DNA of 64,000 nt, taken from IMG/VR virus record IMGVR_UViG_3300047472_000309, positions 246,655 to 310,654 of that record. The stretch is one strand, 5' to 3'. Numbering within the stretch: the stretch's first letter is position 1; each line of letters begins with the position of its first letter. The notes under the pieces were generated by a model. It was not told where the DNA came from and searched no databases. It saw nothing but the letters and a program-made list of their open reading frames with translations. Below are positions 441 through 60,570 of this stretch, piece by piece. The translations under genes were made by a program, and so were the position numbers.

Positions 441-452
441 GCTGACCTCCCG

Positions 453-1334: not shown

Positions 1335-1386
1335 TCAACACCTCGTTTCAGGGAGTGGGGGTGACCCACTCCCCTATGCTCTCGAC

Positions 1387-2280: not shown

Positions 2281-2289
2281 ATCTCACCC

Positions 2290-3267: not shown

Positions 3268-3277
3268 GGTTCAAGCC

Positions 3278-4153: not shown

Positions 4154-4165
4154 TCTCTCCTTGGT

Positions 4166-5668: not shown

Positions 5669-5676
5669 GACTAATC

Positions 5677-6507
5677 CTAGCTCTGGTTATAGTGGATGAG
5701 CGCCGCGCCTACGTAGGTGCCACCCACCACGTTTTTCTGAACCACGACCCGCTCAAAGCTGGTGTTCGCGCCAGGATACTTCGAAGTCGCGTAATCGGTC
5801 ACCATGCCTGCTACAGGGGTGGGCCAGTCGGTGTAGCCAAACTGTTTCTGAATCGCTGCCTTGAGCAACGCCAGATTACTCCAGGTACCATTCGCGCTCA
5901 CGGCCAGCGCATTGGCTGCGGCCGTCGTGCTGTAGAACGGCGACATATCGACATTCCACATCTGCATGCCGATGTCAAGCTTATTGAGCGTCGGGTCGAT
6001 CTTATCGTAGTTTTGTGTGTCCAAACTCACACTGCGGATAACCGAAGAGAGTTCCGGCCAGATCCGGTGAAATTCCAATACCATCGAGCCGGTATAGCCG
6101 AGCGAAGTCGGTTTGGCGACGATGTTAATATTGACTGCCGCGCCTGCGTCGACGCGCGCGATGTTGGTATCAACGACGTCGTCCTGGGTAAAGTTCAACC
6201 CCAGGTACGCATTGACCGTGTCGAGCATGTGGTACAACGTATCGGCACCCACACTGCGCATGACCGGAATATAGTCGTAGGCTTGCGTGAGGTTAATGCG
6301 CTGATACTTAAAATCCTGATACCCGTGATATACCGTCCCCAACACCCCAGTGGTCGGGACGATAGAAGACTTGCCGTCCGAGGCACTCGGGTCCAGACGT
6401 GCGCCGCCCAGATACAGGTTACTTTTCGTAACCGGTGTCGGAAGATGCGGGTTTGCCTGATTAATGAGTGCCAACAGCCGGTCGGAAGCGACTGGCACAA
6501 AAGACAT
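5677..6507 (-). CDS. Tail paralog-family virion protein
   Basis: LLALINQANP, YQRINL, SLGYTGS, GAALIHYN. Confidence 0.75.
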   Translation of the reverse strand: MSFVPVASDRLLALINQANPHLPTPVTKSNLYLGGARLDPSASDGKSSIVPTTGVLGTVYHGYQDFKYQRINLTQAYDYIPVMRSVGADTLYHMLDTVNAYLGLNFTQDDVVDTNIARVDAGAAVNINIVAKPTSLGYTGSMVLEFHRIWPELSSVIRSVSLDTQNYDKIDPTLNKLDIGMQMWNVDMSPFYSTTAAANALAVSANGTWSNLALLKAAIQKQFGYTDWPTPVAGMVTDYATSKYPGANTSFERVVVQKNVVGGTYVGAALIHYNQS

Positions 6508-6579
6508 ACGTACCCCTTAACGAATAAAGAGGGGACCCGAAGGTCCCCTCTCGTTTTAGGTCTGAACCAACAAAACGAC

Positions 6580-7110
6580 TTAAGCCGGTTGGGTGTACAC
6601 GAGACCCGTGAGCGTCGGTGACGTAATGACGCTCGACAGCGGAATGTCGTTGGACTTGAGCGTGAGGGTCATCACGCCTTCGTAGACGACCGAATCCGCC
6701 GTGGCTGCAATCTGGAAGTTGTGCTCTTCGTTCGGGATGCCGCCGGTGAAGGTCGGCAGCGGGCCGTCCGTGTAATCAGCCGCCGTCAGGTTGATCTGGT
6801 AGGCGACGTTCACTTCCGGAATCATATCCGAAATGTTCACCGCATTACCGAGCGCGTAGGTCGTCGAGCGCGCGCCCGGAATCGTTGCCAGGTCCACCCG
6901 GTTGTAGTTCACCACCACATCGCCCGTGTAGCCCGAACCCGCTTGCGCGGACACCGTGATTTGCGTGTCCGGGTTCGGATTGGTACCCGTCATGGCCGTC
7001 GGAATCCCGAAGGAGATCAGAGCGAGCGTCAGGGCACTGGCGTTGTCGTGGTTGATCTGATCCAGAAGGACCTGATCGGGGTCTTTGGTAAAGTCAAGTT
7101 GCCATGCCAT
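6580..7110 (-). CDS. Short tail paralog-family protein (N-domain only)
   Basis: Start moved to MAWQLDF (ATG at 7110); YTGDVVVNYNRVDL; ends IPLSSVITSPTLTGLVYTQPA. Confidence 0.75.
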   Translation of the reverse strand: MAWQLDFTKDPDQVLLDQINHDNASALTLALISFGIPTAMTGTNPNPDTQITVSAQAGSGYTGDVVVNYNRVDLATIPGARSTTYALGNAVNISDMIPEVNVAYQINLTAADYTDGPLPTFTGGIPNEEHNFQIAATADSVVYEGVMTLTLKSNDIPLSSVITSPTLTGLVYTQPA

Positions 7111-7184
7111 TTTCGTTACCTTCTGGAAGGTTAATGGAGTCGAAGAAAACACACATTCGCATAGGATGCGCCAACTTTTACTGC

Positions 7185-7724
7185 TTACACAGGGGGCTGG
7201 ACGTAGACCAGACCACTCAGCGTAGGACGAACAATCACCGAACTGAGGGGAATTAACGCCCCCGGTAATTGAACCTGGAACTCATAAGTCGAGTCCAGCC
7301 ATGCTAGGGAATTGGCACCGATTACACTGAGCGTGTAGGTGCTTTGTTCTTCGCGGTAGACTGTGTCTTCAACCTCGTCGGGCGTCAGGTTAAGGCCCAA
7401 CGCTTCGTTGATCGCATCCAACGAAGCATGAATAGAAAACGGAAACGCCTCGATGACGACGGGCTTAATAAAACCCGCAGGGAGCAACGACAGTACGCTT
7501 AATGGTAGACGCCAGTAATGGATGTCCTCCGGCCCCACGTAGTCGGTCCCTGCTGCCGGAGTAAGCGTCACCTGGGTGTTCCGCCCCCGAGCATCGGAAT
7601 ACTCTTGGGGTTGTCCATACGTAAAATCAACGTGCTCAACCCGATGCAAGCCGGGGTTGTAGGCGTTAATCAAAGCGGTCAAACGATCGCTACTCAATCC
7701 ACCGTAAGGCTTAGGTGTGGCCAT
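7185..7724 (-). CDS. Short tail paralog-family protein (N-domain only)
   Basis: LTALINAYNP, YWRLPL; ends IPLSSVIVRPTLSGLVYVQPPV. Confidence 0.75.
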   Translation of the reverse strand: MATPKPYGGLSSDRLTALINAYNPGLHRVEHVDFTYGQPQEYSDARGRNTQVTLTPAAGTDYVGPEDIHYWRLPLSVLSLLPAGFIKPVVIEAFPFSIHASLDAINEALGLNLTPDEVEDTVYREEQSTYTLSVIGANSLAWLDSTYEFQVQLPGALIPLSSVIVRPTLSGLVYVQPPV

Positions 7725-44516: not shown

Positions 44517-44969
44517 ATGATCATTTACGATGAACCGCGAAACATCTTTGAAGTAACGGAGCAAACGCTCGTTAATCCCGTTAACACGCAAGGTGTGATG
44601 GGCGCTGGCTTAGCATTGGCTTTTCGCAGTACCTTTCCGGGTCTGTTTGAAGAGTATCGCGAGGCGTGCCAGCAAGAGGTGTTTACGCGGCGAGGTTTCT
44701 TCGTGTATGACGTTGACGCTTCGCGCAAGGTGTTGTGTTTGCCGACTAAGCGAGAATGGCGTCATCCTTCCAGACTGGAATGGATTGAAGAAGGTCTTTG
44801 GTATCTATCGAGAGAGTATGAGAACTACGGGATTACCTCACTGGCGATTCCCGAGGTAGGCTGCGGGCGAGGTCAGTTAGGTTGGGCGGATGTGCGCCCA
44901 CTGATCTATCAGTACCTGGACCCTATCGCGTTACCAGTGGGGATTTGTTTAAGCCCCTTTGCAGTCTAA
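44517..44969 (+). CDS. Macrodomain ADP-ribosylhydrolase (DarG/TARG1-like)
   Basis: VNPVNTQGVMGAGLA, LPTKREWR, LAIPEVGCGRGQLGW. Confidence 0.85.
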   Translation: MIIYDEPRNIFEVTEQTLVNPVNTQGVMGAGLALAFRSTFPGLFEEYREACQQEVFTRRGFFVYDVDASRKVLCLPTKREWRHPSRLEWIEEGLWYLSREYENYGITSLAIPEVGCGRGQLGWADVRPLIYQYLDPIALPVGICLSPFAV

Positions 44970-44985
44970 CTGACTGGGAACGACG

Positions 44986-45444
44986 ATGATCATCTACGAA
45001 GCAGAGCGCGAACAGTTACGTGCAGAAGAGCAGGCCCTTCTCACGCCCATCAATATCGACGCCGTCGGAGGCGGGGGTTTGCCTGCGGCGTTTCGCTATG
45101 GCTTTCCCGGCCTCTTTAAAGCGTATTGCTGGGCCATGAAAAAGGGCATCTTCGAAAACGATAGCGTATTTGTCTACGATGTATCGGACGTACGCAAGAT
45201 CGTCTGCATGCCGATGAAGCAGCACCCTCGCTACAGTGCCGAAGAGAAGCTCGAGTATCTTGAAGAAAGCCTGATGGTAGTGGCCACCAGCTACCATCAA
45301 CATGGCATCTCGTCGATGGCGATCAACGAAATCGGTTACGGTGACGTGGATCTGCCCTGGGACAAGGTGAGGCCGATCATCCAGCGCTGTTTTGGACCGA
45401 TCGATTTACCGGTGGGGATTTATCGGGGAGTAGTACCTGTGTAA
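44986..45444 (+). CDS. Divergent macrodomain paralog
   Basis: Collinear with the preceding gene (MIIY, FPGLF, FVYDV, PIxLPVGI) but with altered motifs. Confidence 0.75.
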   Translation: MIIYEAEREQLRAEEQALLTPINIDAVGGGGLPAAFRYGFPGLFKAYCWAMKKGIFENDSVFVYDVSDVRKIVCMPMKQHPRYSAEEKLEYLEESLMVVATSYHQHGISSMAINEIGYGDVDLPWDKVRPIIQRCFGPIDLPVGIYRGVVPV

Positions 45445-45694: not shown

Positions 45695-45755
45695 AAAAAA
45701 AAAAAGAGGTACGGGGTCATAGGCGCGCTCCCTAGGGAGCGCGCTCTATGCCGTC
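45695..45755. terminator. Bidirectional terminator; T11 tract on the minus strand
   Basis: Palindrome GCGCGCTCCCTAGGGAGCGCGC flanked by GTCATAG and CTATGCCG; A11 at 45695-45705. Confidence 0.75.
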
Positions 45756-45757
45756 GT

Positions 45758-46135
45758 TTAGTCACTCACGCCGCGGTAGAACAACTCATGCAGATAACCG
45801 TTGCTGATTTCGGTACCTGGTTCGTACCAGTTGATGCCCTGCTCGATACAGTACTCCTTGTCTTCCGGAGCCGGATCGACCGTGATCTTGTACGCGGGCA
45901 ACATCCCCTTACAACCGTCAAACATCACGAGCATCGAGAACGCCACCCCCTCACAGCGTTCCTTGACCGTACCGCCATTGGGTGTGGTGGCCCAGTAGTG
46001 TGCGTTGTCGCGACAAGCCTGCATGAACTCGTCGCGCACTTCGTTTTCTGTCCACGCTCGCGGTTCTAGGCGTCCTCCATCCAGTTCCTTAAGCGTGTGC
46101 AGATACGCACTGGCTTTCGTTTCTACTTCAGCCAC
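45758..46135 (-). CDS. Hypothetical protein
   Basis: 125 aa; overlaps the upstream gene by 13 nt. Confidence 0.65.
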   Translation of the reverse strand: MAEVETKASAYLHTLKELDGGRLEPRAWTENEVRDEFMQACRDNAHYWATTPNGGTVKERCEGVAFSMLVMFDGCKGMLPAYKITVDPAPEDKEYCIEQGINWYEPGTEISNGYLHELFYRGVSD

Positions 46136-47592
46136 GGTTTCTCCCAGATCACAAACGGATCGTTTTCTTCGTCATTGTGGGTAGCGTCCAGCGCAGCATT
46201 GAGCACCGCGTACAAATCAGCGGCGAGTGCCAGGCTGCGCGGCTGCGACTCTGCTACCAGCGGTGAAGTAAGTGCATCTGCATACGACGCGAAGTGACGC
46301 TTACCTTGGTAGGCTGATCCGAACAGCAGGTTATACTGGATCGACGTATTGCCGAACACTTCCACGTTAAAGAAGAGGCTGCCACCTTCCAAGCCCATGC
46401 GCCGCAGATCGGGGAAGATCTCCCGCTCCATAATGCCTTGCACATGCTGGATGCGCACCGCGATATCCGCAGTATCTGCAAAGCTGCGGTTCTTGACGAA
46501 TGTGAAGGTGAGCGGATCTTCTTGATCGTGATACGGAATGTCGACCTGGAACTGAGCGGTCGAGAATCCCATCGAGTGGAACAGCGCCGGGACAGTCTGA
46601 CCCAGATAGACGAGGGCTTGATTGGGCTGCTCGCTCACTGGGCTGTCTTCTTCAGGGCCCGTATACTCTTCGAAAGCCACGACCCCCTTATCCACTACGG
46701 CAGGCAGCACCCGCTGCAGGTCTTCCATGGTGAAGCGACCCTCGAACCGATCGCCTTGCGCTTGCGAGAGCGAGCGAAAGAACGGGTTGGTCGACAGCGC
46801 AGGCGGCTCCAGGTGAGTGCGCATCGTGTTGAAGATAAGATCGTTTTTCAACACCTCATCGGACACCGTGTCCTCACTCTCCAGTACCTTGAAGTAGCAC
46901 TGCATCAATTCGGCCAGAAAGCGCGAGGGCAAGACGTGACGACGATGCACATAGCGCGCCAAGGTAGTGACCATCCTGCGTGTATCGACGAGATCCTCCG
47001 TACCCGCAAAGTCAAAGGCGGAGAAGTTGGTGGCCACATCCGCCGGGCTCACGCGTGTTTCGCGCTTCGTCAAGTCGCCCGAAGCAAGCCCGGCGTCAAA
47101 GATCAGATGCTCAGCTGGTTCCAGACGACGATGAACGCGATCGCCGTCCACGGTCCTCGTGACCGACGCATGTTCCACCAAACACGAGTTCACGTAGAAG
47201 ACCACGTCCGACCAATCGATCCGCTCGGCACGCCGCGCGGGCATGCGGTTGGTGTAGCCTGCGATGTGGTAGATAGAATTCACGCCGATGGGCGACACAT
47301 ACTCCACGGCGAGCACGAAAGAAAGCCGTTGCGCTTCCCAGCCACCGTCGATGTCGCGCGCAGGCAACATCTCCCTGGCGTAGCTGAGCAGCCCACCCAG
47401 CTCACAGGCGACCGAACGGGCGGTGATGCGCGTGCCGTCGCGCTCGTCCATGAACTTCTTCACCCGCGCGATGGACTCCGGTGTCGCTTCACAGACGAGC
47501 TGAGGGCGTTGTTGCGCTTTCACGCCATTGACGGTGTGCAGGACGAAGGCACGCAGCGCGTAGGCACCATGCGGTGATTCTTTACCAAACAT
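46123..47592 (-). CDS. Second, divergent PicA/Imp1-family (phage nuclear import factor) paralog
   Basis: Full-length collinear motif matches to 56509..58038. Confidence 0.75.
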   Translation of the reverse strand: MFGKESPHGAYALRAFVLHTVNGVKAQQRPQLVCEATPESIARVKKFMDERDGTRITARSVACELGGLLSYAREMLPARDIDGGWEAQRLSFVLAVEYVSPIGVNSIYHIAGYTNRMPARRAERIDWSDVVFYVNSCLVEHASVTRTVDGDRVHRRLEPAEHLIFDAGLASGDLTKRETRVSPADVATNFSAFDFAGTEDLVDTRRMVTTLARYVHRRHVLPSRFLAELMQCYFKVLESEDTVSDEVLKNDLIFNTMRTHLEPPALSTNPFFRSLSQAQGDRFEGRFTMEDLQRVLPAVVDKGVVAFEEYTGPEEDSPVSEQPNQALVYLGQTVPALFHSMGFSTAQFQVDIPYHDQEDPLTFTFVKNRSFADTADIAVRIQHVQGIMEREIFPDLRRMGLEGGSLFFNVEVFGNTSIQYNLLFGSAYQGKRHFASYADALTSPLVAESQPRSLALAADLYAVLNAALDATHNDEENDPFVIWEKPWLK

Positions 47593-47624
47593 TGTAATCT
47601 CCTGTTTTACTCTGGGGGTGGGGG

Positions 47625-48155
47625 TTAGGACACAGCGTGCAAAAGCCGCACCACTTCGTCGTAGGTTTCGTGGAGCGTGCGGTATTCATTGCCTTGCGTG
47701 AACTCCGAGACATGGTAAAACACACCGTCGTCTTGTTCAATCTGATGGGTTAGGATGCGCTCCATTTGGAACATCGCACTATCCTGACCCAATTCGTTGC
47801 ATAGGTAGGCCAGCCAGACCAGATCACCCAAGGTGAACGCGCCCTTATTCCAGCGGCGCACCGTGGCCATTTCGATTTGGCGCCCGATTGCCGAGCTCTT
47901 CCAGACGCGAGTGTTGGCCGCGACAATCTCGTACGCACGATCAAATGGATTGAACGCACCGCCGCGTTGACTGAAATCCGACTCCACCACCATGCGGTAG
48001 AAGTCATCGCATTCAAACGAGGCACTGCTACGCACGCGTTCGATCTGATGCAGGATCTGGATCGGGCCCTTGTGCTCGTTGTAGGTGAGGTCAAAGAAGT
48101 CGTTGAGCAGCAGGTCGACGTTGTGAGCGATTTGATCGAGGCGTTGTACAGTCAT
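47625..48155 (-). CDS. Hypothetical protein
   Basis: 176 aa; ATGA overlap with the upstream gene. Confidence 0.65.
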   Translation of the reverse strand: MTVQRLDQIAHNVDLLLNDFFDLTYNEHKGPIQILHQIERVRSSASFECDDFYRMVVESDFSQRGGAFNPFDRAYEIVAANTRVWKSSAIGRQIEMATVRRWNKGAFTLGDLVWLAYLCNELGQDSAMFQMERILTHQIEQDDGVFYHVSEFTQGNEYRTLHETYDEVVRLLHAVS

Positions 48156-48559
48156 TGTTTCTCCTGGGTTTCTTCTTCAAAGTCTTCGAAGCGCAGGCTC
48201 GCAGGCGCTTCCGGGTTATTACCGTACAGCATGTTGAACATGCCGCGTTCATTGATCGTCAGAAAGCACACCGACGTCACTGGTTGTTCTTCGGTCTGCG
48301 GTTGAAACGCCACGCTCTCCCACAGGTAGCCAAACGCCGGGGTGGAACTACCTGCCACCTTGGCGTGACCCGGAATCAGACTGTTGGCCGAGCGCACGTC
48401 CTTGACCAGGTTATCACCGCCTGCCATGATGATCACTGACTCCAGGAACATGCTCAGCTTCTTGCGCAACGGATTGCTCGAGGCTTTGCGCTTGAGCAAC
48501 TCGATGAAGATGTTCGGATTCGCTTCCGCGATGCGCTTATGTTCCAGCAGATTCGCCAT
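48152..48559 (-). CDS. Hypothetical protein
   Basis: 135 aa; SD AAGGA. Confidence 0.65.
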   Translation of the reverse strand: MANLLEHKRIAEANPNIFIELLKRKASSNPLRKKLSMFLESVIIMAGGDNLVKDVRSANSLIPGHAKVAGSSTPAFGYLWESVAFQPQTEEQPVTSVCFLTINERGMFNMLYGNNPEAPASLRFEDFEEETQEKQ

Positions 48560-52308: not shown

Positions 52309-54534
52309 TTAAGCAGCCAGTTTCTGGCGCGGCGTGTAACCTTGTTCGGCCTGCTCGTAGACAAACTTCCAGCCGCCGCATTGCGCGACGTGCCGTACGA
52401 GTTGGAGCGGCTTGGAACCACCCAGTGGCACAATGCTGCGATCGACCACCTTCTCGATGCCGGTGGGCTTGTCAGCCCGCAAGATTTGCTCGAGGATATG
52501 CTTGTGGGTAAACGGATTGTTGTTGCGATCCAGAATATCGGCCGTGATACGTGCGCCTGCATACGACACGGCAATCCGGACTTCCGCTTCGCCCCAAGCT
52601 CGAATCGCCTGCGTACGCGTGGGGGCTGCATACTTGTCGGCATTGGTGACCTGAGAGAGCACCCCAAAATGCTGGAGCTTACCCGAGGACACCGCGGTCC
52701 AGTCATCGGCGATCTTTTCCAGGATGATGATGTAGACCGATGCAATCCGTACTGGCTTCTTGGTCACCACCTTCTTGCCTGAGTTGCCGGTATACGCGAC
52801 CGGACCATACACAGGCGGATACTGCTCCTGGATCGCCCGCACCATCGGGATATACGCCGGGTCGTTTTCCGGTGGCATGAAGAGCTGCAAGCCATCTGCA
52901 TTCTCGATCGTGCCGTCGTGGTGCTTGATGATGTGGATCACACTGGCCAAGTGCTCGACCCGTGGGCGCGTGTACGAGCCCGTCATGAACCAGCTATGTT
53001 GCAACGGGCTCACGATGGCATAGTAGCCCATCAGGTACTCCCAGACTTCGTCGATCAGCTGCGGCTGTTCGATTTCCATCTGCGCAAGCTTCTTCGTGAG
53101 CATGTACTCCGGGTCGGTACGATCCACCCCGAGCTTCGCCACGATGCGCTTCATCACGTCGCGCGAGGCCGCATTGATGTAGGGCTCGTACAGACGACCG
53201 TAGTTCATGCGGTTCACGGTGGACTCACCCGAAACGATGATGTCCGCACGATTGCCATGCTCGTCGATCGGCATTTCATGCGGTTCGCAGATCTTGCAGA
53301 TCACACCCTTGCCGCCGAAGCAGTCCGTCAGCTTAAAGCCGATGGTCGGGGTGATTTCATACTCGATCACGAATTCCACTCGCCAATCATCGAGCGGGGC
53401 CTGACGATAGAGCTTCTTGATGGATTCGCTCGGGCTGGCACTGTTCTTGCCGACCACGCTGAGCGCTTCCACCACCAACCGGTGAAACTCCGGCGACAGG
53501 CGCGGCTTGCCATCCGCATACTTCGACTTCTGCGAGTTATACAGCTGGATGATTTCCTGATAGAACTCGCGGCGTGCGCGGTCATAGCGGGAAGGCTGCG
53601 TATCCATGCCTTCAGGCACATTAGTGTTCTGGTTATTCGCATCGTGATGCACGCGAATATCCACCACCTTGCCACCCGTAGGCACATAGGTCGCCTTGTC
53701 GAACGTGAAGTCCGGCCGCCGCAACGCTGCGGCCGACTGTTCCACCACCGCCAGACTTTCATCGTAGCTGCGCAGCATCATCAGCAGCCCGTCTTCGCGC
53801 ACCATCTCGCCGATGTCCGGAAACGACTTATACTTCTTATAGTCGCCGTACAAGTTCAGCGGAAAGCGCTTGCTGCCCCACTCGACCACGCGGGTTTCGT
53901 ACGTCTTGAAGCTGAAGCGATCGAGCACATCGCGCGAAATCACGATGCCGTCCTCAGCCACACCCGGAATGGACATGTACGCCACGTTACACTGCACGCC
54001 GTACTTGTAGTCACCGTCCGCAGTCACAGACGGGGAATCCAAGAACACCTCACCTTCTTGGATTTCCGCGCCTTGCACGAGCTTACTGCGCGCCGGACGA
54101 CTCACAAACGGAAAACCGAAATACTGATGCTGTGAGCAAAAGCGCGGCATGTTAATCATGCCAATTTCGCTGCCGCCTTCGGTGGTTTTGAAAATCACCA
54201 CTTGTTGCGGATTTTGCCACTGGTCCTGAATGATCGAATCCGCGCCGTAGCTGGTCCGATACCGATCGATCACTTTCAACACCTGGCCCGTCTTGGGCAT
54301 TTTCACGTTCCAGGTATACTTGCCGAACTCACGTTCCATGCCGGTCTGACAGTAACGTGGCGTGGCTCCCTTCACCACCAGCGTCTGACCGATGTGGCTG
54401 GAGAACATCTGCTCCCGCGAAGCAGAGTTGGCCCCTTTCCACGGATTCAACCCACACACACCCAGCAGCTGCCGCAGAAGCTGATTAGGTTCCGGAAGCG
54501 GTTCATAGACCTTCCGTGCTGAATGAACGTTCAT
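52309..54534 (-). CDS. Non-virion RNA polymerase beta subunit, C-terminal part (phiKZ gp71/73-like, uninterrupted)
   Basis: SASREQMFSSH, AEDGIVIS, GFKLTDCFGGKGVI, RMNYGRLYE, RAWGEAE; start MNVHS. Confidence 0.9.
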   Translation of the reverse strand: MNVHSARKVYEPLPEPNQLLRQLLGVCGLNPWKGANSASREQMFSSHIGQTLVVKGATPRYCQTGMEREFGKYTWNVKMPKTGQVLKVIDRYRTSYGADSIIQDQWQNPQQVVIFKTTEGGSEIGMINMPRFCSQHQYFGFPFVSRPARSKLVQGAEIQEGEVFLDSPSVTADGDYKYGVQCNVAYMSIPGVAEDGIVISRDVLDRFSFKTYETRVVEWGSKRFPLNLYGDYKKYKSFPDIGEMVREDGLLMMLRSYDESLAVVEQSAAALRRPDFTFDKATYVPTGGKVVDIRVHHDANNQNTNVPEGMDTQPSRYDRARREFYQEIIQLYNSQKSKYADGKPRLSPEFHRLVVEALSVVGKNSASPSESIKKLYRQAPLDDWRVEFVIEYEITPTIGFKLTDCFGGKGVICKICEPHEMPIDEHGNRADIIVSGESTVNRMNYGRLYEPYINAASRDVMKRIVAKLGVDRTDPEYMLTKKLAQMEIEQPQLIDEVWEYLMGYYAIVSPLQHSWFMTGSYTRPRVEHLASVIHIIKHHDGTIENADGLQLFMPPENDPAYIPMVRAIQEQYPPVYGPVAYTGNSGKKVVTKKPVRIASVYIIILEKIADDWTAVSSGKLQHFGVLSQVTNADKYAAPTRTQAIRAWGEAEVRIAVSYAGARITADILDRNNNPFTHKHILEQILRADKPTGIEKVVDRSIVPLGGSKPLQLVRHVAQCGGWKFVYEQAEQGYTPRQKLAA

Positions 54535-54640
54535 CTCGTACCTTTCCTTGTTGTAACGACCTACGCTATTACCCCGTCTGACTTCCACTAATGCACTCTT
54601 GCAATGCATTCGCAGAAATCATTTGAGGCTCTTCGTATTA

Positions 54641-54648
54641 GTAATATA
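54641..54648 (-). promoter_or_regulatory. Early promoter TATATTAC upstream of the non-virion RNAP beta gene
   Basis: Exact match. Confidence 0.75.
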
Positions 54649-54675
54649 TGTTTGACTTTATTTAGGTGGAATACG

Positions 54676-55014
54676 ATGGATATTAACAAGTATTCGATTG
54701 GGCTGGATAACCTGGATTACTACAATCCGGGTTTTCGACGGGTCTTAGAAGACCACTTCTCCCTGTTGAAAACACTCGCCTCAACCAAGGCGGTGCCAAT
54801 TGATGGGTATCTCGCAGTGCGTTACGAGTATGACTTCTATGGCTTGATGCAGCAGCAAAATGTGCCTCATCAGCTCCATTGGTTGGTGATGCGCTTGTCG
54901 GGCTATACCTCGCCGGATCAAATGACGCAGGATTTGCAGTCGTACTACCTGCCGGACCCGAACTATGTGGAGTCGCTGCGCTCGGTCTGGAATGCCAAAT
55001 CGGGCGTAAAGTGA
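54676..55014 (+). CDS. Small conserved protein, possibly a T4 gp53/LysM-like baseplate wedge component
   Basis: Start MDINKY, SD AGGTGG; RYEYDFYGL..WLVMRLSGY.SP..LPD. Confidence 0.55.
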   Translation: MDINKYSIGLDNLDYYNPGFRRVLEDHFSLLKTLASTKAVPIDGYLAVRYEYDFYGLMQQQNVPHQLHWLVMRLSGYTSPDQMTQDLQSYYLPDPNYVESLRSVWNAKSGVK

Positions 55015-55045
55015 GGCAGAGTCGCTATAGATGACTCCCTGGAAT

Positions 55046-55100
55046 AAAAAAAGAAGATCGGTAAACAGCAGAGGGCCGAAGCCCTCTGCTGCTATGCCGT
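55046..55100. terminator. Bidirectional terminator
   Basis: CAGCAGAGGGC-CGAA-GCCCTCTGCTG followed by CTATGCCG on the plus strand; A7 at 55046-55052. Confidence 0.75.
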
Positions 55101-55117
55101 TGAGGACTGCGTCCTAC

Positions 55118-56470
55118 TTACAGGCGCACTGCCGGTTGCTGATTCCAACCCCCACCGCCTTGGTTCCAGCTACCGCCTTGCTGGCCCCACTGCTGCTGCG
55201 GCTGACCGCCCCACTGGTTACCCCCACCCCAACCGGGATTGCCCACCGGACCGACCGGATTGGAGAGCGAAGCGCGTTGCGGCGGCTGCGGTTGCCACGC
55301 CTGACCCGGATTCCAGCCATGCGAGCTGCCGTAACCCACCGCTTGTTGCAGCGCGGGCTTGGAGCGCACCAGCGCTTCGAAGTCCGTACCACCTGTCGCG
55401 GTGCGCACCGGGGCACTGCTGGAGGCCGGAACCGACGGTTGCGCAGCAGGCCAACCCGGCGTGGCAGGCGGCGGCGTCGCCGGACGCTGAGCCGACAACG
55501 AGACACCCATCGCACCTTGAGTCGAGGCACCTGCAGGCGCATTGAAGGCCGTCTGGGTCTGCGCGATTTGCTGTTGCTTCTCGGCTTCCGTACCCGGCAC
55601 CGTACCTTCGTTGCCCGCTTGCATCGGCGTGGAACGAATTTCCGGCAGCAGTTCATCGAGATTTTCCAGCTGGTCGACCCAGTCCGCGTTCACGAGCAGA
55701 TTCTCCGGCAGGATGCCTTCGAAGCGCGAGATCAGATCGTTCAGCGGTGCAGCAATCGCTTTCACCGTCAGCAACAGCGCTTCGATGGACGGCGCAATCG
55801 TGCTATTCGAGCCACGATTGTACACCCCGGCGATGTCTTGCTCGGGTAGGATGTAATCCAGCAGGCCGATCAGGGCTTCACGATCCTTCACGCGCAGCTT
55901 CACGCCATGCAGTTCGTTTTCGCCCTTTTTCAGTTCGTTGTAGAACGGGAAGTGCGCCACCCCCACACGCGCGTAGCGCTTGTCGCCGACCGTACCGCCG
56001 CGCTTGATGAAGATCGACACGAAGAGCTTCTGGTGCTGGGTCGCACTGAGGCTATCCATGATTTTCTTCAACGCAGCAAGCGTCTTCTCGTCGGCGTTCT
56101 TCACCTTGGAGAGGAATTCGCTTTGCTCGGGGCTGAGCTTATGCTGCTCGGCTTGGCTGGTGCCGAGTTGCAGGAGCGTATGCACGATGGTGCCGAACAC
56201 CACGTTCATGCGACCATTGATCGCCATGCGAAAGCGCTCGAAGACTTCCGATTCGCCACGCATCACGTTTTCCTGCAACGGATGGAACAGCACCTTGGTG
56301 TCCGGGCTCGGATTAGCCTGGTGTTCGCGTGTAGGCAGCACCAGACGCTTACCCTTCATGGTGAGGGGCTTGCTATCCTTGCTCGTTTTGATCGACACGC
56401 AACCGTCGGTGGTCACGGTCAACCCTGCCGCATCCAGTACGGCTTCGTAGAACTTCAACATTTTACTCAT
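55118..56470 (-). CDS. Conserved core protein (phiKZ gp70-like) with a Q/G/W-rich disordered tail
   Basis: KRLVLPT, FHPLQEN..RGES; lies between the PicA-like and non-virion RNAP beta genes. Confidence 0.7.
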   Translation of the reverse strand: MSKMLKFYEAVLDAAGLTVTTDGCVSIKTSKDSKPLTMKGKRLVLPTREHQANPSPDTKVLFHPLQENVMRGESEVFERFRMAINGRMNVVFGTIVHTLLQLGTSQAEQHKLSPEQSEFLSKVKNADEKTLAALKKIMDSLSATQHQKLFVSIFIKRGGTVGDKRYARVGVAHFPFYNELKKGENELHGVKLRVKDREALIGLLDYILPEQDIAGVYNRGSNSTIAPSIEALLLTVKAIAAPLNDLISRFEGILPENLLVNADWVDQLENLDELLPEIRSTPMQAGNEGTVPGTEAEKQQQIAQTQTAFNAPAGASTQGAMGVSLSAQRPATPPPATPGWPAAQPSVPASSSAPVRTATGGTDFEALVRSKPALQQAVGYGSSHGWNPGQAWQPQPPQRASLSNPVGPVGNPGWGGGNQWGGQPQQQWGQQGGSWNQGGGGWNQQPAVRL

Positions 56471-56508: not shown

Positions 56509-58038
56509 TTACAGTTGACCGAATTGCACCCCGGCCGTGCCATGGTACGACGCACCCGGTGCGATGTCGTTGGAATTCAACACCGCATTAAAGAGGCTAT
56601 TGAAGTCCGTCGCCAACGCGAGCGCGCGCTGATCGTTGTTGGTCACGATCGGCACGAGCAGCGCATCGCAGAAGCTCGGCAGCGTGAAGGTCTCGAAGGG
56701 TCCACCATTCATCGAGATCTCCAGGATCGACTCACCCAGCAAATCGAGCTTCAGGTTAAACGCGTAATCCAGCGTGTTGCTGTACGACACATCGTTCAGC
56801 ACTTCGTTGGCCACCCGCCACTTGAACTTCTCGATAAACTGCGTCATGTCGATCGTGGTGCCTGCCATCGACGGGAAGTCCCGCATGCCGGAGATGACGA
56901 TCTGCGGCTCACGGAATTCATTGCGGTTCGTACAGTGCACGATGATGTTGGCGATCGCAGACTCGACCATGATAGCCGGAATCGAATGCGCGATAATCGT
57001 TGCCACCTGCGTGTACTGGTTCGAACCACCCCAACCCACTTCACTCGAGGTGTTGTTGAAGAAGCCCCCGTGTTGGCCACCCATCGGGTTGATCGGCGAA
57101 GCCTGGCCCTGATACGAGAGCAGCGCGATGTCGTCGTCCATTGCGTGCGGGTCCAGACGTATCAGATCGCTGATCGTGAAGGAGTTGCCGTTCTGGCTGC
57201 CCCGGATCTTGTTGATCGCGTTCATGAACGGATCTTGCGCCACGGACTGCTCGACCGAATGGCCGCGCGCTTGCGAGAGAATCTGGTCGTGTGACTGACC
57301 AAACGCATCGAGCTTCAGCGCCGTCTGATAGTTTTCAAACAGCGCGGACGCGTAAGCCGTCGTATTGGCATTGCGCCGCCACGACTTTTGCGGCAGACCC
57401 GTGACCAAGGTGCGTGTATCGTTCATGTCCGCATTCGTCTCTTGGCCGAGATGGATACGGGTCATGGTCGAATACACGTCCGCAGGCCGCATGCGGAATT
57501 CCTTGTTCGGCTGATGCACGTTCTCCCAGGCATTGTCGACGATCACGTGCGCCGCATCCGCGACGTTATAATAGTCGCGATTGCCGATGGCGGTGCGGGC
57601 GGTGACCCGACGCAAAGCCATGGTGGAATTCACGTAGAAGAACATGTGCGGGTCGATGTTGCCCTGCAGGGTCGGATCAAAATACTCCGAGTAGCCGGTG
57701 ATGACCTGCGTGATTTCGACCCCTGCCGGTCCGATGTGATCCAACAGCATCATGAAGCGCAAGCGCCGCTCCTGCCAACCATGCGGGATCACGACTTCCT
57801 TTTCCCACGCCGCCGAGGGCAGGATAAACTGATTCGCCACCCCGGCGAGGGACGCCGGAGTAGCCGGTTGCTTCGGGTCCAGCCGGTCCGCCACCAGCTG
57901 TTCCACGTTCGGCGTCACGACCGTTTCGTACGGCCGACGGTACTGTTGGCCATGACCGCTGGTCTCGACCATGACAAGCTGACGCACGCGAAACTTGTCA
58001 CCCATCCCGTTACCTACGAAGTTGTTCAGCATGTTCAA
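56509..58038 (-). CDS. picA: PicA/Imp1 phage-nucleus protein import factor (phiKZ gp69-like)
   Basis: 509 aa, immediately downstream of the sigma-like non-virion RNAP subunit in the conserved gp67-68-69-70-71 order. Confidence 0.75.
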   Translation of the reverse strand: MNMLNNFVGNGMGDKFRVRQLVMVETSGHGQQYRRPYETVVTPNVEQLVADRLDPKQPATPASLAGVANQFILPSAAWEKEVVIPHGWQERRLRFMMLLDHIGPAGVEITQVITGYSEYFDPTLQGNIDPHMFFYVNSTMALRRVTARTAIGNRDYYNVADAAHVIVDNAWENVHQPNKEFRMRPADVYSTMTRIHLGQETNADMNDTRTLVTGLPQKSWRRNANTTAYASALFENYQTALKLDAFGQSHDQILSQARGHSVEQSVAQDPFMNAINKIRGSQNGNSFTISDLIRLDPHAMDDDIALLSYQGQASPINPMGGQHGGFFNNTSSEVGWGGSNQYTQVATIIAHSIPAIMVESAIANIIVHCTNRNEFREPQIVISGMRDFPSMAGTTIDMTQFIEKFKWRVANEVLNDVSYSNTLDYAFNLKLDLLGESILEISMNGGPFETFTLPSFCDALLVPIVTNNDQRALALATDFNSLFNAVLNSNDIAPGASYHGTAGVQFGQL

Positions 58039-59603
58039 ACGCTCCTGTTTGCTTGGTTCGTTGCGATTTCGATCGCCAGTTTTGCCATCTTAATCTTTAT
58101 ATCGTAAGGCACCGCATACCGCCGATCATTGGTGTTTTGGACGACCTTCGCGAGCCATCCCGCGGGCACCGTTAAGCGCCACTCATGTTCGCGAAGTTGC
58201 TTGGTCACGTGGTCGATGCCCAGCACAGCGACATTCTTTTCCTTTTGTGACTTCTGCTTGCCGGACTGCCGCCGCGCATGCGGATAGAGCTTATTCAGCT
58301 CTTCCACCATGTTCGCCGGAATCCGGGCTTGGGGGATCACACCGGTCAGCTGCAATTCCTGTGCGTTCGACTGGGCCACTGCTGTCATCAGCCCAGCCAG
58401 CTCGAAGTGACCCCGTTGCCAGAGTACAGCCTGTGCCACTCCCATGGCCTCCAGCACGGATTTCTTCGAGAGATACGGAAATGCACGGGGACTCACCGCG
58501 TCTTCCAGCGTCCACTGGATCAACGCCAACTGCGGGTCCCAGATGTGTTCGTTGGTCAGTTGTTTGACCGCATCCAACGATTCCAACAAAATCCCGAGGT
58601 TCTCCTTAAGCTCCGGGCACACGCGCAACGCCAGTTTGGTGGTGTCGCTGATGTAGTGCTCGACGATTGCGATGTCGCCTGCGGGAATTTCCTGCTTGAC
58701 CTTGTAGCCTTCCAGCTTCGAGAGATTGTTTTCGCTATCCCCCGACTGGCTTTCCGGGATCTTGGGTTTGACCATGCCCATGAAGCTGTGGTCATGACCC
58801 TTGACCTTCTGACCCACGTAGCGATAGATAAACGCCACCAGGTTAAAGTCCGGATCGGTGCCGCTGATGTCGCCAATCGTCAGACGGCGAATCACCACCA
58901 GCGCCAGCACCCAGGTGGAAAAGTCTTCCGTGGAAATCCCGTCGAGAATCGCCGAATCGAATTCCTTCGTTTGCGGCAAGCTCAATTCCACGTACTTCTG
59001 CAACCGTTCCATCGGCGGGCACTGACCTTCAGCCAAGATGTACGACTGCGAGAGCAACTGGAACGCCTTGTACTCCTTCCAGTTGGTCCCGTGTTCCTTC
59101 TCGGTGCGAAACACATACTCGCCCCACACCAGCAGCATTGGCCGCAGCACGACACTCAGCACCACGAGCTGCTTATAGTCTTCGCGCAGATAGGTACGGT
59201 CTCGCGTGCCGATGGCGCTGTGACTATCGCCGTATTCCTCATTGAGGTTGTGCGGCATGGCAATGTCGCTGTGGAAATCAATCCACGAGCGCACATCGTC
59301 GAGCTTGTGCAGCGCGCACAGCTCGGCGATCTGGGGCAACAGCGCCCGAGCCAGATCCTCGGTTTCCCAGATTTCGTCGAAGGTGATGTGAATGCGCTTG
59401 TACACCTCGAAGATCTGGTCCTGGGCTTCCATCGGCTGCTTGTCCCAGAACCCATTGATCTGGTGGAAGATGTCCACATCAGGCTTGATCGACGCCTTAT
59501 CAATCAGCTTGATATTCCACTTCAGTTCCTGATCACGGTGACGTAGGAGCGCAACCGTCTGGTCCCCCAGATGGCCTTCCCGATCGGTGACTACACGCAT
59601 CAT
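58035..59603 (-). CDS. Non-virion RNA polymerase sigma-like subunit (phiKZ gp68-like)
   Basis: Start MMRVV with SD AGGAG; RDRTYLREDY..L..LS; synteny; ~520 aa. Confidence 0.75.
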   Translation of the reverse strand: MMRVVTDREGHLGDQTVALLRHRDQELKWNIKLIDKASIKPDVDIFHQINGFWDKQPMEAQDQIFEVYKRIHITFDEIWETEDLARALLPQIAELCALHKLDDVRSWIDFHSDIAMPHNLNEEYGDSHSAIGTRDRTYLREDYKQLVVLSVVLRPMLLVWGEYVFRTEKEHGTNWKEYKAFQLLSQSYILAEGQCPPMERLQKYVELSLPQTKEFDSAILDGISTEDFSTWVLALVVIRRLTIGDISGTDPDFNLVAFIYRYVGQKVKGHDHSFMGMVKPKIPESQSGDSENNLSKLEGYKVKQEIPAGDIAIVEHYISDTTKLALRVCPELKENLGILLESLDAVKQLTNEHIWDPQLALIQWTLEDAVSPRAFPYLSKKSVLEAMGVAQAVLWQRGHFELAGLMTAVAQSNAQELQLTGVIPQARIPANMVEELNKLYPHARRQSGKQKSQKEKNVAVLGIDHVTKQLREHEWRLTVPAGWLAKVVQNTNDRRYAVPYDIKIKMAKLAIEIATNQANRSV

Positions 59604-59655
59604 TTTCTCCTGCGTAATAAACGTTGTAACGACTCTTTGGATACTGCTCAGTGTA

Positions 59656-59663
59656 GTAATATA
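59656..59663 (-). promoter_or_regulatory. Early promoter TATATTAC
   Basis: Exact match 53 nt upstream of the gp68-like start. Confidence 0.75.
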
Positions 59664-59805
59664 GGTTTTCAACGAGTTTGAATCCACGAGGGATTCTCGG
59701 GTATTCTGTCGTGTTAGGAAAAGGCTGGATCACCCCCATCAGACCACGCCTACCCAAGCGTGGTCTGAGGGAGTGTATCCATTAAGCTATGCTACTGCCG
59801 GGTGC

Positions 59806-60570
59806 TTAGAAGGGCAAGTCGTCTCCGGCGCCGTCGCTACCACCTGCGAAGCCCGAATCGTTGCCGCCACCGCCACCACCGCCGCGGTTATATCCACCAC
59901 CGCCACCACCTTGGCCACCACGGTTGTAACCACCGCCACCACCACCGCCACGATTGAAGCCGCCACCCTGGCCGCCTTCCTTCGGAATCGGTTCTTCCCA
60001 GTGCGACACTTGCATGTGCGCGAGCATCTCGGTGAGCAGATTCCAGTACGCTTCAGCGGCGACCTTCGAGGCTTCGGCCGCCGAGTAGTACTCGCCCGTG
60101 CCGTGCTTGAGCAAATGGAAGTCCGAGAGCTGGAAGTTGAACTTGATGCGCGGCCGGTCCTTGGCCATCACGCCCATCCACACCACGCCGTCCTTGTCCT
60201 TGCCGACGAACAGTTCGGACTGCACCACCGGCTTTTCGCTGCGCTTGCCGCCGGGGAAGATGAAGTTCTTGTTCTCGATCGAGTTCTTGAACTCGTCCTT
60301 GCCGCCCGTGCCGGGGATGAAGTCGATCGCTTGACGCAGCAGGTTCAGGAAGCCGTAGAATGCAGGCGTATCCATGTTCGCGCTGATCTTGCCGTAGTTC
60401 GTGTCGCGGTCGCTGTCCACATTCGTGTAAACAGTGATACGCGGGTTGTTCGCGAAAAGCCCCCACTGGAGCGACGCGAATTTGCCTTCCTGGTTCTTCG
60501 CCGACATCTGCAGCTTCTTGTTGTCGAGCGGAGTCTTCTTGCGCGGTGCTGCTTTGAAATCGCCTGCCAT
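59806..60570 (-). CDS. chmC: ChmC-like nucleus-associated nucleic-acid-binding protein (phiKZ gp67-like)
   Basis: Position upstream of the gp68-like gene; NNPRITV core; RGG/G-rich tail ending DDLPF. Confidence 0.7.
   Translation of the reverse strand: MAGDFKAAPRKKTPLDNKKLQMSAKNQEGKFASLQWGLFANNPRITVYTNVDSDRDTNYGKISANMDTPAFYGFLNLLRQAIDFIPGTGGKDEFKNSIENKNFIFPGGKRSEKPVVQSELFVGKDKDGVVWMGVMAKDRPRIKFNFQLSDFHLLKHGTGEYYSAAEASKVAAEAYWNLLTEMLAHMQVSHWEEPIPKEGGQGGGFNRGGGGGGGYNRGGQGGGGGGYNRGGGGGGGNDSGFAGGSDGAGDDLPF

What the first reader, a model, noticed from the sequence alone, without database searches (positions are those of the whole stretch)
46123..47592. A second, divergent PicA/Imp1 nuclear-import factor about 9 kb from the canonical copy
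Seen: the 489-aa ORF aligns end to end with the PicA-position gene 56509..58038. Paired motifs (paralog/canonical) are GWEAQRLSF/GWQERRLRF, IAGYT/ITGYS, FYVNS/FYVNS, AEHLIFD/AAHVIVD, SPADV/RPADV, DTRRMVTTL/DTRTLVTGL, NPFF..FTMEDL/DPFM..FTISDL, SYADALTSPLV/SFCDALLVPIV and LALAADLYAVLNAAL/LALATDFNSLFNAVL. It lacks the GGQHGGFFNN loop. Known: Imp1/PicA (phiKZ gp69) licenses cargo into the phage nucleus through distinct surfaces, and I know it as a single core gene. Inference: this phage may have a two-channel or regulated import system, such as a second importer with different cargo specificity, a hetero-oligomer partner, a stage-specific importer, or a decoy against host factors that target or hijack PicA.
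Basis: partly seen in the sequence, partly recalled or inferred. Interest (0 to 1): 0.82.

Follow-up and report, generated by a model that had tools for sequence, protein, structure and literature searches.

The report
Fast-evolving second PicA/Imp1 paralog
This soil jumbo phage and its uncultured relatives carry, besides the essential nuclear-import gene picA/imp1, a second, intact, fast-evolving and dispensable copy with the same fold but a rebuilt functional surface, giving a natural handle on how cargo is chosen for the phage nucleus.

Summary
Window 46123..47592 (minus strand, 489 aa) is a true paralog of the canonical picA/imp1 at 56509..58038 (minus strand). They share 23% identity (E 1e-26) and the same PHROG, and their AlphaFold models match the same 15 PicA homologs (TM 0.72-0.85).

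The canonical copy lies in the phiKZ gp67(Imp6)-gp68-gp69-gp70 block. The paralog closes the same operon 8.9 kb downstream.

It is not a one-off. Orthologs occupy the same slot in all seven loci, from at least four FLC9-like lineages, that cover both flanks. Six long contigs carry both copies. The cultured phage FLC9 has lost exactly this cassette. No cultured phage shows a significant second locus.

The gene is under purifying selection (omega about 0.19) but evolves 4-5 times faster than canonical picA (omega about 0.04). It keeps 29 of 55 conserved family positions and lacks a flexible loop. Its equivalent of the phiKZ T367 functional patch is rebuilt yet conserved among paralogs.

Most likely it is a neofunctionalised, accessory, cargo- or host-specific import adaptor. 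Decoy and non-import roles remain open. Function is untested. I found no description of this paralog family in the literature searched.

The parts
46123..47592 (-). PicA/Imp1 paralog CDS, 489 aa, ATG start (the finding)
   Evidence: ORF. Homology to the canonical copy, E 1e-26. phrog_3141, E 1.5e-27. AF2 pLDDT 92.4, pTM 0.91. Foldseek TM 0.72-0.84 to 15 PicA homologs. Orthologs at 86-25% identity in the same slot. omega 0.16-0.19.
47599..47603 (-). Shine-Dalgarno AGGAG, 6 nt upstream of the paralog's ATG
   Evidence: Read directly from the sequence.
45758..46135 (-). 125-aa gene whose GTG start overlaps the paralog's stop by 13 nt (probable translational coupling); found only in the window's immediate subclade
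   Evidence: 74% aa identity in L005, L006 and L009, against 47% for the opposite-strand ORF. phrog_29367, E 4.7e-11. Absent from L002-L004, L012, L019 and L024. Sequence.
45695..45744 (-). Conserved GC-rich hairpin (10-bp arms) followed by a T-run at the convergent junction; probable end of the minus-strand operon
   Evidence: Sequence. The same module follows the paralog in L024 and follows gp365 in FLC9. The consensus terminator scan did not report it, because the T-run lies about 17 nt after the stem. Calling it a terminator is an inference.
47625..48155 (-). 176-aa gene directly upstream of the paralog; function unknown; as fast-evolving as the paralog
   Evidence: Syntenic in all loci. 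26-46% identity between lineages. No Pfam or PHROG hit.
48152..48559 (-). 135-aa gene upstream in the same operon; function unknown
   Evidence: Synteny. No family hit.
56509..58038 (-). Canonical picA/imp1 (phiKZ gp69 homolog); likely true start is the ATG at 58032 (507 aa)
   Evidence: tblastn to PHIKZ069, E 2e-30. phrog_3141, E 2.1e-84. AF2 pLDDT 90.0. Foldseek. Start codon.
59806..60570 (-). Imp6 (phiKZ gp67) homolog, the direct Imp1 interactor in phiKZ; single copy in the window
   Evidence: BLASTP to PHIKZ067: 34% identity, E 1e-25. No paralog in the window. Role of Imp6: 10.1101/2024.03.27.586873.
58035..59687 (-). phiKZ gp68 homolog, upstream neighbour of canonical picA
   Evidence: BLASTP E 2e-42. 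phrog_3209.
55118..56470 (-). phiKZ gp70 homolog, downstream neighbour of canonical picA
   Evidence: BLASTP E 3e-27. phrog_3520.
44517..45444 (+). Two AdfM-like macro-domain genes (44517-44969 and 44986-45444), convergent with the paralog operon; context and candidate cargo only
   Evidence: Pfam Macro, E 1.5e-11 and 2.4e-5. 43% identical to each other. About 36% identical to the macro proteins of phiKZ-like phages. phiKZ AdfM is a PicA cargo (PMC13309987).

Best explanation
SHOWN. 46123..47592 encodes an intact member of the PicA/Imp1 fold family that is separate from the phage's canonical picA. It is the last large gene of the operon that also holds picA, the RNA polymerase beta-subunit-like genes and a helicase. 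It has its own strong ribosome-binding site. Orthologs sit in the same slot in at least four FLC9-like lineages of soil and rhizosphere jumbo phages, and six long contigs carry it together with a canonical picA. The rank order of divergence between lineages matches that of the core genes, so inheritance looks vertical. The cultured phage FLC9 has lost it cleanly, so it is dispensable there. It is under purifying selection but evolves 4-5 times faster than picA. It keeps the scaffold residues of the family. It lacks a flexible loop, and the segment equivalent to the phiKZ T367 / H365 / P446 / N466 patch is rebuilt but conserved among paralogs. INFERRED (most likely). The gene arose by duplication of the FLC9-type picA and was neofunctionalised. 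It probably acts as an accessory, cargo- or host-specific licensing adaptor at the nuclear shell, working beside or together with the canonical PicA-Imp6 machinery. In that sense it resembles the lineage-restricted, cargo-specific import factors Imp2, Imp4, Imp5 and Imp7 of phiKZ. Its most variable surface (residues about 216-294) would track changing cargo or host partners. The confidence given (0.45) is for the inferred import-adaptor mechanism; that this is a real, functional PicA-fold paralog I hold at about 0.95.
For: Homology and fold. Canonical context (gp67-gp70 homologs). Same slot in relatives: L002, L003, L004, L006, L007, L009, L012, L019, L024. Both copies on one contig: window, L006, L007, L009, L010/L012, L024. 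FLC9 loss: L024 is 92-95% identical to FLC9 in core genes yet has the paralog, and the junction alignments show only the cassette missing. Selection: paralog omega 0.16-0.19 at dS 0.4-0.6, canonical omega 0.04. Long-range divergence: 26-30% identity for the paralog against 66-75% for the canonical C-terminus, with the same rank order as the RNA polymerase subunits. Residues: 29 of 55 canonical-conserved positions kept; R33>P, N369>I, W334>S, T341(=phiKZ T367)>N and P452>A changed. Residues 324-432 are 66-81% conserved among paralogs but 3-10% identical to the canonical copy. The most variable segment, 216-294 (omega 0.45-0.63), aligns with phiKZ Q297/H300/R306, which are cargo-specific sites (papers). 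Translation signals. Independent assemblies. Precedent for distinct cargo interfaces on Imp1 and for lineage-restricted cargo-specific import factors: 10.1101/2024.03.27.586873 and 10.64898/2026.09.21.753271.
Against: There is no direct evidence of expression, shell localisation or any import activity; no RNA run was listed. The Thr equivalent to phiKZ T367 is nearly invariant in canonical PicA and is the only site known to give a general import defect, yet it is Asn here. Two 100%-invariant canonical residues are also replaced, so the protein may not translocate cargo at all. Only one Imp6 homolog is present in the window, which argues against a complete second channel. FLC9 does without the paralog while keeping both macro-domain genes, so no conserved cargo strictly needs it. 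The origin by in-lineage duplication is only 'not rejected' (AU p 0.36); the best quick tree places the paralog clade away from the FLC9-type canonical clade.
Confidence: 0.45

Rival explanations
1. Decoy or dominant-negative PicA mimic. The protein keeps the PicA scaffold, so it can dock where PicA docks or bind what binds PicA, but it has lost the translocation-competent patch. It would then sequester host factors that exploit PicA, tune import timing, or poison the import machinery of a co-infecting related phage.
For: It has lost the T367-equivalent Thr and other invariant residues and lacks the flexible loop, while keeping the fold. It evolves fast, as arms-race genes typically do. It is dispensable in FLC9. 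Diverged alleles co-occur in one rhizosphere sample (run X3). PicA and its cargo co-evolve and cognate specificity separates related phages (PMC13309987).
Against: The rebuilt patch (residues 324-432) is strongly conserved among paralogs, with omega 0.06-0.08 over 295-354. That looks like a new specific binding function more than simple loss. No target is known and there is no evidence of toxicity or exclusion.
Confidence: 0.2
2. The PicA fold has been co-opted for a function unrelated to protein import, for example another shell-associated or cytoplasmic role linked to the fast-evolving neighbouring small genes.
For: About half of the conserved family positions are replaced. The gene lies outside the core import block, next to rapidly evolving genes of unknown function. 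The fold has no other known relatives that could constrain its function.
Against: The only known function of this fold is import licensing. The scaffold motifs are retained (GW..R..F, G112, N135, G150, P183-D185, D203-R205, D439, P444). Variability peaks on a surface that is cargo-specific in phiKZ Imp1.
Confidence: 0.2
3. The second copy was captured by horizontal transfer from a distant nucleus-forming phage and did not arise by duplication within the FLC9-like lineage. This rival concerns origin only and is compatible with any of the functional readings.
For: In the quick ML tree the 20-row paralog-containing clade (SH-aLRT 95) does not nest in the FLC9-type canonical clade. Related proteins (P0035, P0037, P0044, P0057) sit in unrelated phage contigs and in different contexts.
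Against: Second-clade proteins always hit the FLC9 canonical PicA best, at E 3e-34 and 2e-32, against 1e-19 to 1e-22 for the next group. The AU test does not reject a joint clade (p 0.36). GC content matches the surroundings. Canonical residues are lost in a graded series, clade C, then B, then A1.
Confidence: 0.13
4. It is a decaying duplicate on its way to becoming a pseudogene.
For: It evolves faster than the canonical copy and has been lost in FLC9.
Against: The reading frame is intact, at 466-500 aa, in every in-slot ortholog down to 25% identity. omega is 0.16-0.19. The AF2 model is very confident. There are clade-specific invariant blocks. It has a strong ribosome-binding site.
Confidence: 0.02

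Closest known systems
PicA / Imp1 (phiKZ gp69, PhiPA3 gp63, Goslar gp174; PHROG 3141)
   Same: It is homologous in sequence (E 1e-26 to the window's canonical copy, E 2e-7 to phiKZ gp69). Its predicted fold is the same (TM 0.72-0.84 to 15 homolog models). Length and secondary-structure order are similar. It keeps scaffold motifs such as GW..R..F, FYVNS, RP.D, D.R and (Y/F).DAL..P. It is encoded by a phage with canonical picA, Imp6, gp68 and gp70 homologs, and a relative's contig also carries chimallin.
   Different: It is a second copy outside the gp67-gp70 core block. It is dispensable (lost in FLC9), and its omega is 4-5 times higher. 26 of the 55 positions conserved in canonical PicA are changed, including two invariant ones and the T367 equivalent. 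The flexible loop of about 20 residues is deleted. The main functional patch is rebuilt but conserved among paralogs.
Lineage-restricted, cargo-specific import factors of phiKZ (Imp2, Imp4, Imp5, Imp7)
   Same: The functional analogy is only inferred: an accessory factor confined to one phage lineage that could add cargo-specific import on top of the core Imp1 machinery (10.1101/2024.03.27.586873; 10.64898/2026.09.21.753271).
   Different: No sequence relationship to those proteins was found or expected. The protein studied here is an Imp1 paralog, not an unrelated small factor.
Reported 'two homologs' of PicA in Vibrio phage pVa-21 (Morgan et al., legend of Fig. S3)
   Same: It is the only literature remark I found about more than one PicA homolog in a phage.
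   Different: It was not reproduced as a second locus. KY499642.1 shows a single place even when queried with its own PicA at E <= 0.01. The remark may reflect two database entries that differ in length.

Membership tests
PicA/Imp1 (phiKZ gp69 family, PHROG 3141) | Significant sequence homology to phiKZ gp69 and its orthologs | tested here: met
   Paralog: phrog_3141 E 1.5e-27; E 1e-26 to the window's canonical copy; E 2e-7 to phiKZ gp69. Canonical copy: E 2e-30 to PHIKZ069.
PicA/Imp1 (phiKZ gp69 family, PHROG 3141) | The family's own fold, which has no relatives outside the family | tested here: met
   The paralog model (pLDDT 92.4) and the canonical model (pLDDT 90.0) hit the same 15 BFVD PicA homologs at TM 0.72-0.85. 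The paralog's only other match below E 0.001 has TM 0.18. Nothing matched in the PDB.
PicA/Imp1 (phiKZ gp69 family, PHROG 3141) | Location in the conserved core block between gp68-like and gp70-like genes, next to Imp6 | tested here: not met
   The canonical copy meets this. The paralog lies 8.9 kb downstream, after the helicase and two small genes, at the end of the operon.
PicA/Imp1 (phiKZ gp69 family, PHROG 3141) | Core gene: one copy in every nucleus-forming phage, strongly constrained, essential | tested here: not met
   The paralog is absent from FLC9 although a 92-95% identical relative has it. It is absent from all cultured phages searched. Its omega is 0.19, against 0.04 for the canonical copy. 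Essentiality itself cannot be tested here.
PicA/Imp1 (phiKZ gp69 family, PHROG 3141) | Conservation of the family's near-invariant residues, including the Thr equivalent to phiKZ T367 | tested here: inconclusive
   29 of 55 positions are kept. 26 are changed, including R33>P and N369>I (both 100% conserved in 58 canonical sequences) and T341>N324.
PicA/Imp1 (phiKZ gp69 family, PHROG 3141) | Forms a punctum on the nuclear shell and licenses cargo import | not testable with these tools
   This needs microscopy and genetics. No RNA data were listed.
Chimalliviridae (host genome of the gene) | Encodes chimallin (ChmA) and the conserved nucleus-associated gene block | tested here: met
   The syntenic relative L010 has PF25677 Chimallin about 8 kb upstream of picA. 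The window holds Imp6, gp68, gp69 and gp70 homologs and RNA polymerase beta-subunit-like genes. ChmA itself would lie just beyond the window's end.

The most novel reading that the evidence does not exclude
FLC9-like nucleus-forming phages run a two-adaptor import system. The conserved PicA handles the core replication and transcription cargo. The fast-evolving paralog is a swappable second licensing adaptor, acting alone or as a hetero-oligomer with PicA. It would admit lineage- or host-specific cargo, such as anti-defence proteins (for example the adjacent AdfM-like macro-domain proteins) or particular host factors. Import specificity could then evolve quickly without touching the essential gene.
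Probability: 0.25. Interest if true: 0.85.

Novelty: new variant of a known kind. Interest (0 to 1): 0.62.

Why it matters
PicA/Imp1 is the only known gatekeeper of the phage nucleus. It has no solved structure and no relatives of known function, and because it is essential it is hard to dissect. A natural paralog that keeps the scaffold but replaces half of the conserved positions separates residues needed for the fold from residues tied to canonical function. These replacements include the T367 equivalent and the surrounding patch. The paralog family also shows that import-related proteins can be accessory and fast-evolving. That is what one expects if nuclear access is part of the arms race with hosts or with competing phages. 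There is a ready experimental system. FLC9 is cultured on Burkholderia glumae and lacks the gene, while a 92-95% identical metagenomic relative has it. The paralog can therefore be supplied in trans and tested for localisation, partners and cargo.

Tried and rejected
1. pVa-21 precedent. Morgan et al. mention two PicA homologs in pVa-21. I found one locus only in KY499642.1, even with its own protein as query, so I do not count it as a precedent.
2. Searches for more paralog loci. The metagenome-contig scan with the paralog alignment found nothing. The broad second-clade alignment was too divergent for the pattern search. Sub-clade and single-protein scans of IMG/VR found nothing.
3. Two copies in clade-C phages. 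I could not establish whether the phages carrying P0035, P0037, P0044 and P0057 also have a canonical picA.
4. Expression. No RNA run was listed. The sigma-70 and terminator consensus scans gave no more sites than shuffled sequence, and these phages use their own polymerases anyway.
5. Recent foreign origin. Rejected, because GC content is the same as in the neighbours.
6. Allele replacement by recombination as the sole cause of the paralog's divergence from near relatives. Rejected for L006, where dS is 0.39 against 0.16-0.32 in core genes while dN is ten times higher. It is possibly a contributor for L007, where dS is 0.63 against 0.09-0.21.
7. Other libraries. Pfam, NCBIfam, PADLOC, PDB sequence and fold searches and the ESM Atlas gave nothing for either copy.
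8. Pseudogene. Rejected (see rival explanations).
Full report
**1. Observation**

The window has a 489-aa ORF at 46123..47592 and a 509-aa ORF at 56509..58038, both on the minus strand. It also shows a gap of about 22 residues where the canonical protein has the GGQHGGFFNN segment.

- Both proteins match a single PHROG, phrog_3141 (E 1.5e-27 and 2.1e-84), almost end to end. Neither has a Pfam, NCBIfam or PADLOC family.
- In an all-against-all comparison of the window's ORFs, this is one of only three paralogous sets.
- The canonical gene most likely starts at the ATG at 58032, not the TTG at 58038.

**2. The canonical copy is picA/imp1**

- tblastn finds 149 phage records with one place each. 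These include phiKZ PHIKZ069 (E 2e-30), PhiPA3 gp63, and Ralstonia, Erwinia, Serratia, Vibrio and other jumbo phages.
- Its neighbours are homologs of phiKZ gp67/Imp6 (E 1e-25), gp68 (E 2e-42) and gp70 (E 3e-27).
- A syntenic relative carries chimallin about 8 kb upstream.
- The window comes from IMG/VR contig UViG_3300047472_000309, 310,654 bp. Its DNA occurs in rhizosphere and soil metagenomes.
- The nearest cultured phage is Burkholderia phage FLC9, at 70-80% amino-acid identity in core genes.

**3. The paralog has the same fold**

- AlphaFold2 with a 91-sequence alignment gives pLDDT 92.4 and pTM 0.91 for the paralog. The canonical copy gives 90.0 and 0.89.
- The two models share the same order of strands and helices.
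- Foldseek against BFVD returns the same 15 PicA homologs for both, at TM 0.72-0.84 and 0.72-0.85. Beyond these, the paralog's only match below E 0.001 has TM 0.18 and the canonical copy has none.
- The PDB holds no relative by sequence or fold. This agrees with the published statement that PicA is a novel fold.
- The only internal low-confidence stretch of the canonical model is residues 311-323. That is the segment the paralog lacks, so the deletion removes a flexible loop and not part of the core.

**4. Distribution**

The paralog has its own orthologs at 87, 86, 80, 65, 64 and 44% identity. More distant ones, at 25-30%, are P0031 (L012), P0029 (L019) and P0033 (L024).

- Wherever both flanks are available (L002, L006, L009, L012, L019, L024 and the window), the gene occupies the same slot. 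It follows the helicase and two small genes and precedes a convergent 67-69-aa gene and two macro-domain genes. The partly covered loci L003, L004 and L007 agree.
- Canonical picA and the paralog lie on one contig in the window, L006, L007, L009, L010/L012 and L024.
- FLC9 lacks the gene. L024 is 92-95% identical to FLC9 in core proteins and has it. The junction alignments show that FLC9 differs only by the missing cassette, with the conserved hairpin and T-run module following gp365 directly. FLC9 therefore lost it recently, and the gene is dispensable there.
- No cultured phage shows a significant second locus. Queries with the canonical copy, the paralog, P0035, P0037 and the pVa-21 PicA hit one place per record. 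The one exception is an unexamined second place in pVp-JHP1101, found only under the loose E <= 0.01 limit.
- Morgan et al. remark that pVa-21 has two homologs. That could not be reproduced as a second locus.
- Independent assemblies confirm the gene and its junctions. One Logan contig covers 45450-49006 without a single difference, and a 36-kb contig from another study covers the region at about 97% identity. One sample also holds a strain with a much more diverged allele.

**5. Phylogeny**

An exhaustive profile search finds 925 family members at E <= 0.001.

- In a quick ML tree of 80 sequences, the window's paralog clade (support 100) joins the other in-slot paralogs in a 14-row clade (99). 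That clade is nested in a 20-row clade (95) that stands apart from the FLC9-type canonical clade.
- Members of the outer part (P0035, P0037, P0044, P0057) lie among small accessory genes in unrelated phage contigs. One of these contigs has a tubulin/PhuZ-like gene. Whether those phages also have a canonical copy is unresolved.
- Second-clade proteins always match the FLC9 canonical PicA best.
- An AU test does not reject a joint clade of the second clade and the FLC9-type canonical sequences (p 0.36).
- Duplication within that lineage followed by acceleration is therefore plausible but not shown.

**6. Selection**

| Measure | Paralog | Canonical picA or core genes |
|---|---|---|
| Nei-Gojobori omega | 0.16-0.19 (at dS 0.4-0.6) | about 0.04 |
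| Amino-acid identity to the closest relatives (L006, L007, L009) | 80-86% | 98-100% (canonical picA and the adjacent RNA polymerase, helicase and gp70-like genes) |
| dS against L006 | 0.39 | 0.16-0.32 |
| dN against L006 | 0.074 | about 0.007 |
| Identity between the deep lineages | 26-30% | 66-75% canonical C-terminus; 80-84% RNA polymerase subunits |

The higher dN with similar dS means the difference is mainly faster protein evolution. Between the deep lineages the rank order of divergence is the same for the paralog and the core genes, which fits vertical descent at a rate 4-5 times higher. GC content is unremarkable.

**7. What changed in the protein**

Of 55 positions that are at least 80% conserved in 58 canonical sequences, the paralog keeps 29.

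- Kept: GW..R..F, G112, N135, G150, P183-D185, D203-R205, D439, P444.
- Changed (26): these include R33>P and N369>I, both invariant in canonical PicA, plus W334>S, P452>A and T341>N324.
- T341 corresponds to phiKZ T367. That residue is Thr in 54 of the 58 canonical sequences, and it is the only residue whose mutation gives a general import defect.
- The losses are graded across the second clade, with clade C the most canonical-like and the window's clade the most derived.
- Residues 216-294 are the most variable (omega 0.45-0.63). They align with phiKZ Q297, H300 and R306, which are cargo-specific sites.
- Residues 295-354 are the most constrained (omega 0.06-0.08).
- Residues 324-432 are 66-81% conserved among paralogs but only 3-10% identical to the canonical copy. 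This stretch corresponds to the phiKZ patch H365/T367/A369/P446/N466/E468.
- Overall this is the signature of a new, conserved function on an old scaffold, not of decay.

**8. Gene organisation**

- An AGGAG ribosome-binding site sits 6 nt before the ATG.
- A 125-aa gene (45758..46135, phrog_29367) overlaps the paralog's stop and is present only in the window's subclade.
- A conserved hairpin and T-run module closes the operon at a convergent junction. The terminator role is inferred.
- Only one Imp6 homolog is present in the window.

**9. Interpretation**

It is shown that this is a real, intact, conserved, fast-evolving, dispensable PicA-fold paralog. Its function is inferred.

- Most likely reading (about 0.45): an accessory licensing adaptor at the nuclear shell with lineage- or host-specific cargo. 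This would be analogous in role to the lineage-restricted factors Imp2, Imp4, Imp5 and Imp7 of phiKZ.
- Decoy or dominant-negative mimic: about 0.2.
- Co-option for a function other than import: about 0.2.
- Pseudogene: excluded.
- A lead, not a finding: two AdfM-like macro-domain genes lie next to the paralog. In phiKZ, AdfM is a PicA cargo whose import depends on Q297, which aligns with the paralog's most variable segment. However, FLC9 keeps both macro-domain genes without the paralog.

**10. Novelty**

The two primary papers, a 2025 review, a 2026 Imp7 preprint and other texts searched do not describe a PicA/Imp1 paralog family. I therefore rate it a new variant of a known kind: a divergent, accessory subfamily of PicA/Imp1.

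Noticed in passing
window 1-7724, minus strand: There is a tandem array of about eight mutually homologous ORFs of 146-500 aa, with pairwise E values from 1e-5 to 1e-31. It is a multigene family of unknown function at the start of the window.
   Followed up: no
window 44517-44969 and 44986-45444, plus strand: Two adjacent macro-domain genes are 43% identical to each other and about 36% identical to the macro proteins of phiKZ-like phages, so they are AdfM-like (anti-DarT). Both copies are kept in FLC9, L012, L019 and L024. The second copy evolves faster (59-71% against 78-82% identity between lineages).
   Followed up: partly
window 47625-48155, minus strand: The 176-aa gene directly upstream of the paralog diverges as fast as the paralog: 82% identity to near relatives and 26-46% between lineages. 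It has no family hit apart from a sub-threshold acetyltransferase-like match.
   Followed up: no
window 45758-46135, minus strand; L005, L006, L009: This 125-aa gene (phrog_29367) overlaps the paralog's stop codon and is present only in the window's subclade. Its dS against L006 is 1.77, far above its neighbours, which suggests allele replacement. A co-occurring strain in run X3 lacks it.
   Followed up: partly
L001 25610-26236 (FLC9 gp365); L012 10001-10579; L024 9284-9916: A 192-210-aa gene sits just upstream of the paralog slot in FLC9, L012 and L024, and is absent from the window's clade. FLC9 therefore has gp365 without the paralog, and the window has the paralog without gp365. The 161-aa gene in the same position in L019 (1125-1610) matches FLC9 gp365 only weakly and instead matches the 162-aa gene of L012.
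   Followed up: partly
window 56509-58038: The mechanical ORF call starts at a TTG (58038). Orthologs indicate the ATG at 58032, giving 507 aa.
   Followed up: yes
L020 14467-15132 and 16744-17916; L025 15845-16843: The phage contig carrying P0035 holds a GIY-YIG homing-endonuclease-like gene and a TnpB/OrfB_IS605 gene. The 277-kb contig carrying P0057 has a tubulin/TubZ-like (PhuZ-like) gene 4.4 kb from the PicA-like gene.
   Followed up: no
window 54300-55800: GC content swings sharply, from 0.49-0.51 at 54300-55200 to 0.64-0.65 at 54900-55800. This spans the small plus-strand gene and the 3' part of the gp70-like gene.
   Followed up: no
KY499642.1 (L023): [quoted passage not shown] Only pVa21_217 matches.
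   Followed up: yes
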